In this document: positions 25,184 to 29,408 of the stretch, piece after piece
Layout of the letters: each line of letters opens with the position of its first letter
Position numbering within the stretch: the first letter of the stretch is position 1
Assembly (NCBI GenBank): GCA_965644265.1
Contig: OZ286459.1
Coordinates: 59,210,001 to 59,274,000, forward strand
DNA length: 64,000 bases
Direction: 5' to 3'
Source of the DNA: Glycera tridactyla
Lineage: Eukaryota
The notes under the pieces: model-generated
Told to the model about the DNA's origin: nothing
The model's input: the letters and a program-made list of their open reading frames with translations, nothing else
Databases searched by the model: none
Program-made: the position numbers and the translations under genes

Positions 25184-25295
25184 GCGTGCGTGATTTACAC
25201 ATAATGATAGTCTTTCTGATACGGTCCCTCGTATGTTGGAGTGCGCCTGCGCGGCTTGACGTCGTATGACCGTCCGGCAGTCACTCCAATAAATA
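25184..25295 (+). promoter_or_regulatory. Candidate globin proximal promoter (TATA-like ATAAATA 25289-25295; TGACGTC 25257-25263; tandem GCGTG 25184-25192)
   Basis: Motif matches 85-200 bp upstream of the globin ATG. Short motifs only, with no expression data. Confidence 0.4.
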
Positions 25296-25379
25296 GCAGA
25301 CACAACCACCAGGCTCCTCATCTCTGTGGATCGAGAGCATCTTAGTCGTTTCGAATCGGGTTTTGCCTTCCAAGTCACC

Positions 25380-25480
25380 ATGGGTCTGTCTGAGCAGCAA
25401 GTTGCCATCGTGAAGAATTCCTGGCCTGAGATCATCTCTGGCGATGATGGCGTCCAGCTTGGCCACGACATGTTCGCCAG
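25380..25480 (+). CDS. Globin exon 1
   Basis: caagtcaccATGG start, 101 nt, ends AG|GTGGGT within codon B12 (phase 2). Confidence 0.93.
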
Positions 25481-28400
25481 GTGGGTGGAATATTCATTTA
25501 AAGCTTGGTCGTAATATCACCCACATCCTTTCACCCTGTGACAAACATATTTGAATTGTAGCATATGGTTACGACTCTATTGAATGATGAACTTTAGGTC
25601 CGCAGTCTGAAGGAGTGTCATGGCGTTTTGGTTTAAGGAGTTTTTCCTCACCACTCGACGCAGTCATTAACAATGAACCTCCAATATATGGTGGAAACCG
25701 GGCAGTTTGGACGGTCTTCTGGAAAAAAAAGCTGACAGTTTAGGTCACTGGCGTCATTTTGGATGTATTTACACCTTGGTGAAAAGAGGCAAATGGCGTC
25801 ATTCCTGTCCAGAGAATATACCCGCTCAGATGTCTTCGGATATTGTAAGGTTGAAATGACGAGAAAACATTCTACACCCAGTCATATCTCCGAAGTGAAA
25901 TTCCTCTGCCACAAGCAGGACAAGACGCTTACCCTAAGTTGATTGGAAACAACTACACACTTTCAGCTTCCCCATCATCTCGTGCTAAGAGATGGTGGGA
26001 GTGATACCAGCAGGGGACAGAGTATCCAATTTTCATATACCAGGAGCACATGACATACCATACCCTTTTGGTTGGCACATGACGCTAAATTGTGACCTAT
26101 TACAACTCTCACGACTATACCCCCTCCCCTTCATAGTGCAGAATATGCTCAATTAACGAATAGAGTATACAGTCGAACATGGTCTAAAGACCACCTCTCT
26201 ATAAAGACCACCTGTCTATAAAGACCACCCTGAGCTGCGACCGTGATAGTATGTTCAATAGTAAATGACCTCTCTATAAAGACCACCTGCCTATAAAGAC
26301 CGCTTTTTGATGCGACCGAAGGCGGTCTNNNNNNNNNNNNNNNNNNNNNNNNNNNNNNNNNNNNNNNNNNNNNNNNNNNNNNNNNNNNNNNNNNNNNNNN
26401 NNNNNNNNNNNNNNNNNNNNNNNNNNNNNNNNNNNNNNNNNNNNNNNNNNNNNNNNNNNNNNNNNNNNNNNNNNNNNNNNNNNNNNNNNNNNNNNCCTTA
26501 GAAATCATTGACCTTGGGTTAGTCTTCTAGGCTCCAGGTTGGTCCACGCGAGCCCTCTTGTTTTAGAATTCCGACAATGGCAGCCGCTGAGATGCCGATT
26601 GATTTGACGTGTAAGCTGAGGCAAATGAAAACATTGAAAGACTTCATAGGATCTGCGGCATTATCTGAAACTGTGATTTAACCCCCCTCCCCCCCCCCCA
26701 CCCCCTCCTGTGCGAAGAGTGGTTTAGTTTATCTCTGATAGCTCAGCAGCCAGCTTGACCAGCAGCGCAAAACGCTAGGGTGGAGGATTCAAATAGGATC
26801 AGTGAGACCAGATTGGATCTCGGAAGTTTCGTTAATATTCTTGAACCGCATTTGATGGTCGATCCCTCGGTGCCGTTGAAAACCATCTGCATCTTCTTTT
26901 TTGCACCATGTGTGAAGATCAACCACATATGAGAATGCATCCACTCTTTCGCGATCTCCCGCAGTTTTGTGCCAAAAGCGGCTGGCTATTTGGTACTCCG
27001 AACACTATTTGGAGGTGCCAGTGACAATGCCAGAATATAAATTAAATTTGAATTCATCGATTCGCTGTGGATGATGATAATAATGAACATTATTATTGAC
27101 ATTATCATTACCAGTATCATGACCCCCAAACTGCTTCATTTCAGGTACTTCAATGACAACCCGGAGATGACTCATGTCTTTGGGTACACTGGAAAGCCCG
27201 AACTTTTGCGTCACAATGCTAAACTTCGGGAACACGGCAAGAAGATCGTTGACCAGGTGAGAGTTCATGTATTCTATATATACTGTGAAGCCTGTGACGA
27301 GATGGGATTCTCGTCGGAGGTATATTTCACTATCTCAACAGGATGTCTTTAGTCGTCGGTTCCACTGCGAAGGTGTGCTTCAAAACACTCCAAACCCGCC
27401 ACTCACCTAGTATACTCTCATCTGCATGCAGATGAAATATACGACAGATATACACTGCGTGCAGATATCTGCGAATGATAATATCAATATTTTTGGGAGA
27501 AGGATGACCCTCTCGATACATCAAGTGGGTGTGACCAAGTTTGAAGGACGCTCTACGATGATAATAATAATGATAATAATAACAATAATAATGATGATAG
27601 TAGTGGTGGTGGTGGTAGTAGTAGTAGTAGTGGTAGTAGTAGTTCGATAATCGTTTAGTGACGCATCAATCATTTCCTCTTACTGTATATGTGTCTTGAA
27701 AACCAAATATTGTCAGCACTCCGTTAAGATGTTCGGATTTCTCGAGCACTACTCGGGTGTGTGAAATATATCAAATTCATTCAGTGTGCTAATCTATGAA
27801 TTGCTTTTTGTGTCTCGGAAATCAGTAATGGGGGGGGGGGGCGGCTTTCAAGTTCGAAAATCATGCCCCAAATCATAATTACAGAGGTGTGAGATTCTGG
27901 AATATCTGAAGGAAGGTTCAGAAGGCCATCTCTGCTTCAACACTTATTTTAGACATTTTAGACTAACGTTGACTGTTGATAAACCAAGCGTTTGAGCCAG
28001 AATTTGACAATGATTGCTTGTTCGTCTTTTAGATTGGAAAGGCCGTAGCAGAATGCCATGATCAGGCGAAGATGAAGGCCACCCTTAGAGAGCTGGGCAA
28101 CCGCCACAAGGGATTCGGCCCCATCAAGGCCGAGCACTTCCCGGTTAGTATTTTACTCTGCAACAGTTCTGCATTGGTAAGCCATTCCGGGATTGACTGG
28201 ACAGTGCGGGGTTCATGGATACTCTGAGATGGGTTGGAACGCTCTTGTGCTAATCAACAAACGTGAAAACTAACCAAACATCCAACCAACCGTCTATATT
28301 ATCTGGGTATTGTTGGTGGGTGATTTTGGTGGTGGTGATGGTGGTGGTGGTGGTGGTGGTGGTGATGGTGGTTCTGATTGGTTTGGAGGGTTGTCAGCTC

Positions 28401-28828
28401 CCAAAGTGGTCGATTGTGACATGCATGGATAGGATTAACTGAAACGCCAACTTGCAGGAGGCGAAATGACATAAACCCATTGTGTCCAACAANNNNNNNN
28501 NNNNNNNNNNNNNNNNNNNNNNNNNNNNNNNNNNNNNNNNNNNNNNNNNNNNNNNNNNNNNNNNNNNNNNNNNNNNNNNNNNNNNNNNNNNNNNNNNNNN
28601 NNNNNNNNNNNNNNNNNNNNNNNNNNNNNNNNNNNNNNNNNGCGGTGGCGACGGCGGCTACGTCTCAAAACCATGGTTCGTACTATAATCCCTAATTTTG
28701 TTGTGCAGGCACTTGGGGATGCCTTCGTCGATGCCGTGAAGGCCAAGTGCAGGGGCGTGGACTCAACCACCTGGTATTTCGCCTACCGGGCAATCGCCGA
28801 CGCTATGGTCGAGGGCCTCAGGTCATAG
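25380..28828 (+). CDS. Single-domain intracellular globin, 147 aa, 4 exons / 3 introns (B12.2, E15.0, G7.0)
   Basis: Spliced protein MGLSEQQVAIVKNSWPEIISGDDGVQLGHDMFARYFNDNPEMTHVFGYTGKPELLRHNAKLREHGKKIVDQIGKAVAECHDQAKMKATLRELGNRHKGFGPIKAEHFPALGDAFVDAVKAKCRGVDSTTWYFAYRAIADAMVEGLRS. Globin landmarks: Trp A12, Phe B10, Pro C2, Phe CD1, His E7, Ile E11, His F8, Phe G5, Trp in helix H. All introns GT-AG. No signal peptide. AATAAA at 29013-29018. Confidence 0.95.
26170..26328. mobile_element. MITE copy (CAGTCGAAC family) in globin intron 1, right end lost in an N block
   Basis: TA-CAGTCGAAC start; interior is the reverse orientation of the 17749 copy. Confidence 0.8.
27145..27256 (+). CDS. Globin exon 2
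   Basis: Acceptor gcttcatttcag, 112 nt, ends ...HGKKIVDQ|GTGAGA (phase 0, before E15). Confidence 0.93.
28033..28143 (+). CDS. Globin exon 3
   Basis: Acceptor ttcgtcttttag, 111 nt IGKAV...LGNRH...EHFP, donor GTTAGT (phase 0, G7.0). Confidence 0.93.
28709..28828 (+). CDS. Globin exon 4
   Basis: Acceptor aattttgttgtgcag, ALGDAF...EGLRS, TAG at 28826-28828. Confidence 0.93.
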   Translation, partial: ALGDAFVDAVKAKCRGVDSTTWYFAYRAIADAMVEGLRS

Positions 28829-29408
28829 GATGGGACTATAGCCCGGATGCCAGCCAGGCACGCCACCTGTCGGACTTCAGGAGCATCTACATCGCTTGTT
28901 TCAAGATGTTTGAATTTCTGCACGTTTCTCCTCGAACTACCTCAGATGAACAGTGAGCCGACAGTCCTATTCGCTCCGATTTCTTGTTGATGATTGTGTC
29001 ATGTACTTCGATAATAAAAATATACAGTATAGTTTGTATCGGAGTAGTTTTGCACTGAGCATACTCGGTTGAAGAACGTGCCAAATTCATGCTTTGAACA
29101 CGAACCACAAATNNNNNNNNNNNNNNNNNNNNNNNNNNNNNNNNNNNNNNNNNNNNNNNNNNNNNNNNNNNNNNNNNNNNNNNNNNNNNNNNNNNNNNNN
29201 NNNNNNNNNNNNNNNNNNNNNNNNNNNNNNNNNNNNNNNNNNNNNNNNNNNNNNNNNNNNNNNNNNNTTACTTATATACAATGATGGGGTAACATGGACT
29301 TGGACAAAGATGGCCAGTTGCTCTGCATGCTGAACAACCCTGAGAACAAGTACCAACACTGTCTTGGTACAGGGGTGATGATCTGGGGATTATCTCATAT
29401 TACATATA

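What the first reader, a model, noticed from the sequence alone, without database searches (positions are those of the whole stretch)
25380..28828. Animal globin with a central intron at the plant haemoglobin position E15.0
Besides the ancient B12.2 and G7.0 introns, intron 2 (27257-28032) falls in phase 0 after H(E7)-G-K-K-I(E11)-V-D-Q(E14), which is E15.0 by myoglobin numbering. E15.0 is the central intron of plant haemoglobins. Among animals, central introns usually sit elsewhere (neuroglobin E11.0, globin X E10.2, nematode E8.1), with E15.0 reported in Chironomus as a presumed independent gain. An intact intracellular globin (F B10, H E7, I E11) from what appears to be a different invertebrate lineage, with the exact plant-type three-intron pattern, bears on parallel intron gain versus ancestral retention.
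Basis: partly seen in the sequence, partly recalled or inferred. Interest (0 to 1): 0.72.

Follow-up and report, generated by a model that had tools for sequence, protein, structure and literature searches.

The report
Worm haemoglobin gene with plant-position intron
This is a real, expressed red-cell-type haemoglobin gene of a probable annelid worm. Its extra middle intron sits at the same spot as in plant haemoglobin genes, but the whole worm gene family shares it, so it is most likely a gain in that lineage and not an ancient relic.

Summary
Window 25380-28828 (+) is a four-exon gene for a 147-aa globin. Its introns lie at B12.2 (phase 2, in Arg34), between Gln71 and Ile72 (phase 0, E14|E15, "E15.0") and at G7.0. 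Spliced transcript contigs from four public runs (two studies) join the exons at exactly these GT..AG sites. Both N gaps lie inside introns 1 and 3, and those contigs skip them.

An AlphaFold model (pLDDT 90) and ungapped alignments fix His64 as E7 and Ile72 as E15. The only close relatives in a 1.8-billion-protein library are the Glycera dibranchiata polymeric (54%) and monomeric haemoglobins.

The same genome holds at least nine more paralogues, on seven other chromosome-size pieces, with the same three introns. These form one supported clade with the Glycera globins. Four other globins in the genome, and a sea-star relative, have an unbroken central exon.

The central intron is therefore a trait of this annelid red-cell globin clade, and one lineage-specific gain explains it best. 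Published work puts E15.0 in plants, Chironomus and a cryptomonad. I found no report for annelids.

This is a solid new instance of a known phenomenon, of modest interest. Earlier scan notes on other DNA of this genome also call it annelid.

The parts
25286..25296 (+). CCAAT/TATA-like motif (CCAATAAATAG) about 40-50 nt upstream of where the transcript contigs begin; a putative core promoter
   Evidence: Sequence read directly. Contigs start at 25337-25359. Promoter function is inferred only.
25337..25379 (+). 5' UTR (the minimum extent covered by transcript contigs)
   Evidence: table 8: records start at 25337 (X2), 25345 (X1, X4) and 25359 (X5).
25380..25480 (+). Coding exon 1 (Met1 to the first two bases of Arg34; helices A and B up to B12)
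   Evidence: the splice joint 25480|27145 is present in 4 runs.
25481..27144 (+). Intron 1, phase 2, position B12.2. It holds the assembly gap 26329-26495 and an abundant interspersed repeat at about 26168-26328.
   Evidence: GT..AG; skipped by the spliced contigs. Its length is only an estimate because of the gap.
27145..27256 (+). Coding exon 2 (third base of Arg34 to Gln71; B12 to E14; contains CD1 Phe46 and distal His64)
27257..28032 (+). Intron 2, phase 0, between Gln71 (E14) and Ile72 (E15), i.e. E15.0. It is 776 nt, has no gap, and contains a trinucleotide microsatellite at about 27552-27648.
   Evidence: Donor CAG|GTGAGA and acceptor TTTTAG|ATT. The joint 27256|28033 is present in 4 runs from 2 studies.
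28033..28143 (+). Coding exon 3 (Ile72 to Pro108; E15 to G6; contains proximal His96)
28144..28708 (+). Intron 3, phase 0, position G7.0. It holds the assembly gap 28493-28641.
   Evidence: Donor GTTAGT and acceptor GTGCAG. The joint 28143|28709 is present in 4 runs.
28709..28828 (+). Coding exon 4 (Ala109 to Ser147 plus the TAG stop; helices G and H)
28829..29031 (+). 3' UTR with an AATAAA signal at 29013-29018
   Evidence: Contigs reach 28974-29031. The motif was found.

Best explanation
The locus is a functional, transcribed gene for an intracellular haemoglobin subunit of the Glycera polymeric red-cell type, in a probable annelid genome. It has the two ancient globin introns (B12.2 and G7.0) and a third ordinary U2-type GT-AG intron in phase 0 between codons E14 (Gln) and E15 (Ile/Val). 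That third intron is shared by the whole clade of Glycera-type globins in this genome, both the His-E7 'polymeric-like' and the Leu-E7 'monomeric-like' branches. It was therefore already present before those branches split. Most likely it was gained once on the stem of this annelid clade, at a site that now reads CAG|RT in every intron-bearing gene, which fits the consensus protosplice site. On this reading it is independent of the plant, Chironomus and cryptomonad introns at the same position. The intron has no known function of its own. The exon structure, the junctions, transcription, the fold, the family-wide presence and the absence from outgroup genes are shown here. The single gain and its timing are inferred.
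For: Gene model and junctions.

Globin identity and key residues: (Foldseek TM 0.90-0.91 to Glycera Hb 1jf3/1hbg).

Closest relatives: G. dibranchiata P1/P2 at 54% identity over the same 147 aa, and monomeric Hbs at 32-35%. Everything else in 1.84 billion representative proteins is at or below about 36%.

Paralogues: genes on C28, C39, C32, C26 (two), C18 (two) and C17 (two) all have exon 2 ending ...Q|gt and exon 3 starting ag|(I/V)(G/S), in phase 0, plus B12.2 and G7.0. C1, C28 and C39 have identical exon sizes of 101/112/111/120 nt.

Tree: all genes with E15.0 plus the Glycera P and M globins form one clade (UFBoot 97 / SH-aLRT 98). Glycera P nests with C39/C1/C28 (100/99). Glycera M is sister to the Leu-E7 gene C26b (84/74).

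Outgroups: four other globin genes of the same genome (C7, two on C17, C4) have one uninterrupted exon from B12 to G6. So do the domains of the Patiria miniata multidomain globin.

Literature: cnidarian, placozoan and echinoderm globins and amphioxus Gb4 lack central introns, and the authors favour convergent gain of central introns (PMC3485006, PMC3087553).

Gene integrity: the differences between runs inside the CDS are three synonymous changes (two of them at one site) and two conservative replacements (G2S, V142A).
Against: No genome of a second species carrying this clade could be examined, so the age of the intron is bounded only by paralogue relationships within one genome plus the placement of the Glycera proteins. 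Gene structures of the Glycera dibranchiata globins and of other annelid sister globins (for example Aphrodita nerve myoglobin and the Platynereis intracellular globins) were not available here. The gain could therefore be older than the clade. The transcript evidence comes from assembled contigs of runs whose library type is not on record, not from raw reads. The species is not identified. 'Annelid' rests on the Glycera-type globins and on earlier unchecked scan notes. The match to the plant position rests on published helix numbering, which I did not re-derive from a plant gene.
Confidence: 0.8

Rival explanations
1. Ancestral retention: E15.0 is the original central intron of the eukaryotic globin gene, kept in plants and in this annelid clade and lost everywhere else in animals.
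For: The position and phase are identical to the published plant central intron, in a gene that also keeps B12.2 and G7.0 (PMC2228317, PMC4732748).
Against: Four other globins of the same genome lack it. So do the sea-star relative and, according to the literature, cnidarian, placozoan, echinoderm, most arthropod and vertebrate globins (PMC3485006, PMC7457136). The clade that carries it is nested among lineages without it. Retention would need many independent losses against one gain. E-helix introns occur at well over a dozen different positions in animal globins, so a chance coincidence is plausible (PMC2576238, PMC3087553).
Confidence: 0.04
2. Older or broader gain: the E15.0 intron arose earlier than this clade, for example in an ancestor of many annelid or lophotrochozoan intracellular globins, and is simply under-reported because gene structures are rarely described.
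For: The Platynereis globin paper shows 'additional intron positions' only in a figure and does not name them. No gene structure was available for the nearest outgroup, Aphrodita nerve myoglobin. Only 7 papers in the searchable library mention E15.0 together with globin and intron.
Against: Three annelid-genome globins that fall just outside the clade (C7, C17c, C17d) lack it. No protein outside Glycera comes close to the clade in the large library.
Confidence: 0.13
3. Intron sliding: an older central intron at a nearby E-helix position shifted to E15.0 in this lineage.
For: Nearby positions exist in other animals, such as E14.1 in sandflies and E16.1 in mosquitoes (PMC7457136).
Against: No globin in this genome has an intron at a neighbouring E-helix position. 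The authors read consider sliding able to explain only very small shifts (PMC3087553). All ten genes share exactly the same site and phase.
Confidence: 0.02
4. Artefact: a wrong gene model, a misassembly across the N gaps, or a pseudogene.
For: There are two assembly gaps inside the gene span.
Against: Spliced contigs from four runs in two studies reproduce all three joints, and the gaps are intronic. The frame is intact with all key haem-pocket residues. Nine paralogues have the same structure. The own-genome search listed no unspliced, retrocopy-like match of this gene.
Confidence: 0.01

Closest known systems
Glycera dibranchiata polymeric haemoglobin components P1/P2 (UniProt P23216, P21659)
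   Same: Same length (147 aa) and collinear end to end. Identity is 54% to this gene and 61% to the paralogues on C28 and C39. Both have His at E7, and they fall in the same tree clade with 100/99 support.
   Different: This is a different species, and the divergence is deep. This gene has Cys79 and Cys122 at positions other than the P1 cysteines. As far as I could find, the gene structure of the Glycera proteins has not been published.
Glycera dibranchiata monomeric haemoglobins (PDB 1jf3, 1hbg, 1jf4)
   Same: They are the best solved-structure matches (E 7.5e-21; Foldseek TM 0.90-0.91, rmsd 1.5-1.6 A). The genome also holds Leu-E7 paralogues (C26b, C42) like the Glycera monomers.
   Different: This gene has His, not Leu, at E7. 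It has five more residues than the monomers between helices C and E, and it lacks their two-residue FG and four-residue GH insertions.
Plant haemoglobin / leghaemoglobin genes (three introns: B12.2, E15.0, G7.0)
   Same: The nominal positions and phases of all three introns are the same, according to PMC2228317 and PMC4732748.
   Different: The proteins are only distantly related (lupin leghaemoglobin E 8e-7). The distribution in animals argues that the central intron is not inherited from a common ancestor. The plant position was taken from the literature and not re-derived here.
Chironomus haemoglobin genes with a single E-helix intron at E9.1 or E15.0 (Hankeln et al. 1997, as cited in PMC7457136)
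   Same: An animal globin lineage with an intron at E15.0 that is interpreted as a recent gain.
   Different: The Chironomus genes are mostly intronless or have only the E-helix intron. The genes here keep B12.2 and G7.0 as well, which gives the full plant-like pattern. The phylum also differs (Annelida versus Arthropoda).
Vertebrate neuroglobin (E11.0) and globin X (E10.2) genes
   Same: Four-exon globin genes with B12.2, a central E-helix intron and G7.0.
   Different: The central intron lies 4 to 5 codons upstream and, for globin X, in another phase. These proteins are not close relatives (22-23% identity in the structural matches).

Membership tests
Globin superfamily (Pfam PF00042, 3-on-3 fold) | Significant match to the family profile | tested here: met
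   PF00042, E 1.6e-19, 71 bits against a cut-off of 22, residues 30-141.
Globin superfamily (Pfam PF00042, 3-on-3 fold) | Proximal His F8, Phe CD1 and the eight-helix A-H fold | tested here: met
   His96, Phe46 and helices A-H in the AF2 model (pLDDT 90.3). At least 500 Foldseek matches in the PDB at E <= 0.001, and all 50 listed are globins.
Glycera-type annelid red-cell haemoglobins | Sequence clade membership with the Glycera P and M globins | tested here: met
   54% identity to P1/P2 over the full length. Clade support is 97/98, and 100/99 for the P subgroup.
Glycera-type annelid red-cell haemoglobins | Expression in coelomic red cells and self-association into polymers | not testable with these tools
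   Only anonymous transcript contigs are available. There is no tissue or protein information.
Plant-type three-intron globin gene structure (B12.2 / E15.0 / G7.0) | Introns at these three codon positions and phases | tested here: met
   Phase 2 in Arg34 (B12), phase 0 before Ile72 (E15) and phase 0 before Ala109 (G7). Junctions come from transcripts and the register from alignment and model.
Plant-type three-intron globin gene structure (B12.2 / E15.0 / G7.0) | Common descent of the central intron with the plant intron | tested here: inconclusive
   Common descent cannot be tested directly. The intron is absent from four other globins of this genome and from a sea-star relative, and the carrier clade is nested. 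Both argue against it.
Neuroglobin / globin X gene type | Central intron at E11.0 (neuroglobin) or E10.2 (globin X) | tested here: not met
   The intron follows E14, not E10.

The most novel reading that the evidence does not exclude
The E15.0 intron of this annelid clade is the same intron as the plant central intron. On this reading it is a relic of a three-intron ancestral eukaryotic globin gene, lost in nearly all other animals. A weaker form of the idea is that E14|E15 is a true hotspot where introns were inserted independently at least four times: in plants, Chironomus, Guillardia and these annelids.
Probability: 0.04. Interest if true: 0.7.

Novelty: new member of a known kind. Interest (0 to 1): 0.3.

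Why it matters
Globin genes are the classic test case in the debate over whether introns are ancient or were gained later. The plant central intron, predicted from protein structure before it was found, was long read as evidence for an ancestral four-exon gene. This locus shows that a whole annelid haemoglobin family carries the complete plant-like pattern. The distribution within the same genome points to a gain, which adds a clean case of independent arrival at the same codon boundary in a third animal or plant lineage. It also gives the first gene structures I could find for the much-studied Glycera-type haemoglobins. It predicts that the Glycera P and M genes have the same three introns. 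It does not reopen the debate.

Tried and rejected
- The word-based protein search found no relative at E <= 0.001. The exhaustive HMMER search was needed to find the Glycera globins.
- The first run search, with a 2-kb stretch that was mostly intron, listed nothing. Exon 4 plus the 3' UTR found the runs.
- The scan's notes contained nothing under 'globin'.
- The chiton neuroglobin-like gene (P0029) was not on record for a gene-structure check.
- I found no genome paper for Glycera and no open paper on Glycera globin gene structure. The word-start searches for 'Glycera' mostly matched 'glyceraldehyde'. No open paper gave the gene structure of Aphrodita nerve myoglobin either.
- Exons 3 and 4 of the C42 paralogue were not found within about 15 kb downstream. 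It is counted only as a partial gene, because only its E14 donor side is seen.
- Rfam found nothing in the window.
- I considered and rejected three readings: a retrocopy, since the own-genome search listed no unspliced match of this gene; an exon hidden in a gap, since the transcripts have no extra letters at the joints; and a pseudogene, since the frame is intact and the polymorphism is mostly silent.
- My first trial model ended exon 3 at 28146 (AG|T, adding a Val). I corrected it to the GT donor after 28143, which the transcripts confirm.
Full report
**1. What is at the coordinates**

Reading 25200-29000 and splicing at the obvious GT..AG sites gives four coding exons: 25380-25480, 27145-27256, 28033-28143 and 28709-28828. 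Together they make 444 nt, which encodes 147 aa plus a TAG stop.

My first trial ended exon 3 three bases too far, at an AG|T that adds a Val. The true donor is CCG|GTTAGT.

- Intron 1 splits the Arg34 codon after its second base (AG|G).
- Introns 2 and 3 are in phase 0, after Gln71 and after Pro108.

**2. The gaps**

The two runs of N (26329-26495 and 28493-28641) lie inside intron 1 and intron 3. I did not fill them.

Continuity was tested with public reads. Four runs from two studies (labelled organism A and organism B) each hold one 533-626 nt contig. Each contig covers about 25337-25359 to 25480, then 27145-27256, then 28033-28143, then 28709 onward to between 28882 and 28974. The joints are reported as 25477>27142 (cut +3), 27254>28031 (cut +2) and 28142>28708 (cut +1), all GT..AG.

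Depth over the introns is zero except for an abundant interspersed repeat at about 26168-26328, so these runs behave as RNA. The own-genome search listed no unspliced match of this gene, so the joined form is mRNA and not a retrocopy. The gaps therefore affect only the stated lengths of introns 1 and 3.

The transcript has these flanking features:
- a CCAATAAATAG motif upstream at 25286-25296
- an AATAAA signal at 29013-29018, just before the contigs end at about 29031

Differences between the runs and the assembly inside the CDS are three synonymous changes and two mild replacements, G2S and V142A.

**3. Helix numbering**

The protein matches Pfam Globin at E 1.6e-19.

- HMMER alignments to Glycera haemoglobins and to lamprey Hb V are ungapped from the E7 position through the E helix.
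- A nine-sequence alignment with Glycera, Aphrodita, chiton and Nematostella globins has no gap between E7 and E20.
- An AlphaFold2 model (pLDDT 90.3, pTM 0.85) has helices A 5-18, B 25-38, C 41-45, D 52-57, E 59-77, F 82-99, G 106-121 and H 127-146.

With the standard helix lengths (B16, E20, G19, from established myoglobin numbering), this gives B12=Arg34, E7=His64, E11=Ile68, E15=Ile72, F8=His96 and G7=Ala109. Foldseek's best matches are the Glycera monomeric haemoglobins (TM 0.90-0.91).

**4. What gene it is**

The word-based search found nothing. The exhaustive HMMER search of 1.84 billion representatives found only 251 proteins at E <= 0.001.

- The only close single-domain hit is Glycera dibranchiata polymeric globin P1/P2: 147 aa, 53-54% identity, E 9e-46.
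- Next come the Glycera monomeric globins, at 32-35% identity.
- Everything else is at or below about 36%: echinoderm multidomain globins and 'neuroglobin-like' proteins of a chiton, a rotifer, a thrips and Nematostella, plus Aphrodita nerve myoglobin.

The gene is thus a Glycera-polymeric-type intracellular haemoglobin. The best identity of any paralogue to the Glycera dibranchiata proteins is 61%, so the genome is not that species. Earlier, unchecked scan notes on other parts of this genome also call it annelid.

**5. The intron is a family trait**

A six-frame search of the 2.04-Gb genome found many exon-wise matches whose boundaries fall at residues 34, 71 and 109 of the query. I fetched the loci and built models.

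Genes on C28, C39, C32, C26 (two), C18 (two) and C17 (two) all end exon 2 with ...HG(K/R)K..Q|gt, or ...LG(K/N)..Q|gt in the Leu-E7 genes. All start exon 3 with ag|(I/V)(G/S), in phase 0. All also have B12.2 and G7.0. C1, C28 and C39 share exon sizes of 101/112/111/120 nt. An eleventh gene, on C42, shows the same donor, but its downstream exons were not found.

Every junction reads CAG|RT, which fits the usual protosplice consensus.

Four other globin genes (C7, two on C17, C4) have one open exon from B12 to G6. It is continuous across E14|E15, for example AAG ACG GTG GGT.

**6. Phylogeny**

A maximum-likelihood tree of 27 sequences gave these results:
- All E15.0 genes plus the Glycera P and M globins fall in one clade (UFBoot 97 / SH-aLRT 98).
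- Glycera P1/P2 nest with C39, C1 and C28 (100/99).
- The Glycera monomers are sister to the Leu-E7 gene C26b (84/74).
- The genes without the intron, and all non-Glycera proteins, fall outside.

The intron therefore predates the split between the polymeric and monomeric types. This predicts the same structure for the Glycera genes.

The closest non-annelid relative that could be checked at the DNA level is the Patiria miniata multidomain globin. It has uninterrupted 77-78-residue central exons. This agrees with the published statement that cnidarian, placozoan and echinoderm globins lack central introns (PMC3485006).

**7. Comparison with what is known**

| Lineage | Published central intron position(s) | Source |
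|---|---|---|
| Plants | E15.0 | PMC2228317, PMC4732748 |
| Chironomus | E9.1 or E15.0 | PMC7457136, citing Hankeln 1997 |
| Guillardia (a cryptomonad) | E15.0 in one globin | PMC4101818 |
| Neuroglobin | E11.0 | PMC3485006 |
| Globin X | E10.2 | PMC3485006 |
| Amphioxus | E8.1, E11.0, E18.0, E20.1 | PMC3087553 |
| Sandflies | E14.1 | PMC7457136 |
| Mosquitoes | E16.1 | PMC7457136 |
| Nematodes | E2.0, E3.2, E5.2, E6.0, E9.1, E10.0, E10.1, E13.2, E16.0, E17.0, E18.0 | PMC2576238 |

With so many E-helix sites already used in animals, one more lineage landing on E15.0 is not very surprising. The authors of these papers already favour convergent gain.

I found no open paper reporting E15.0 in annelids or any other lophotrochozoan, and none on Glycera globin gene structure. 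The Platynereis paper marks extra introns only in a figure.

**8. Verdict**

- The plant-like pattern is real.
- It belongs to a whole clade of at least ten genes, not to one gene.
- One lineage-specific gain explains it best (about 0.8).
- An older annelid or lophotrochozoan origin is possible (about 0.13).
- True ancestral retention is unlikely (about 0.04).

The result is a sound but modest addition: a new lineage for a known kind of feature, plus the first gene models for a classic haemoglobin family.

Noticed in passing
L031:5168-5430 (-), i.e. G000:C26 about 99101167-99101429: The Leu-E7 paralogue C26b has about 3.5 tandem copies of a roughly 70-nt unit. The unit spans the 3' end of intron 1 and the first 15 codons of exon 2 (RHLKDHPDMITVFGY). 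This resembles the 'mirage' minisatellites described at the B12.2 boundary of amphioxus globin genes (PMC3087553).
   Followed up: partly
window:26168-26328: An interspersed repeat in intron 1, next to the assembly gap, carries the internal motif TATAAAGACCACC several times. It is matched by many transcript contigs at very high summed depth in all four runs. It is probably an abundant SINE-like element.
   Followed up: no
window:28033-28144 (exon 3): Other contigs, with 20 to 60 times higher summed depth, match exon 3 at 90% or more and then continue with GTCTGGGAGATGCTC... This fits exon 4 of the C39 paralogue (GLGDALLEAM). A sister globin therefore seems to be much more highly represented in the transcript contigs.
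   Followed up: partly
window:36811-38121 (+): A single 436-aa open reading frame encodes a complete ADA2/TADA2A-like transcriptional adapter, with ZZ, Myb/SANT, TADA2A-like and SWIRM domains. Having no intron is unusual for an animal gene, so it may be a retrogene.
   Followed up: no
window:56832-58658 (-): A 608-aa ORF with a reverse-transcriptase domain (RVT_1, E 1.4e-35). It is a retroelement lying in the stretch that another reader of this window noted as satellite-like.
   Followed up: no
window:28826: Runs X1 and X2 (organism A) carry a one-base insertion inside the stop codon. This changes TAG to TAA-G or TGA-G, so the protein end is unchanged.
   Followed up: partly
L032 (G000:C42:20320000-20329900): A Leu-E7 globin gene is present with only exons 1 and 2. 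No exon 3 or 4 was found within about 15 kb downstream. It may have a very long intron, or it may be a truncated gene.
   Followed up: partly
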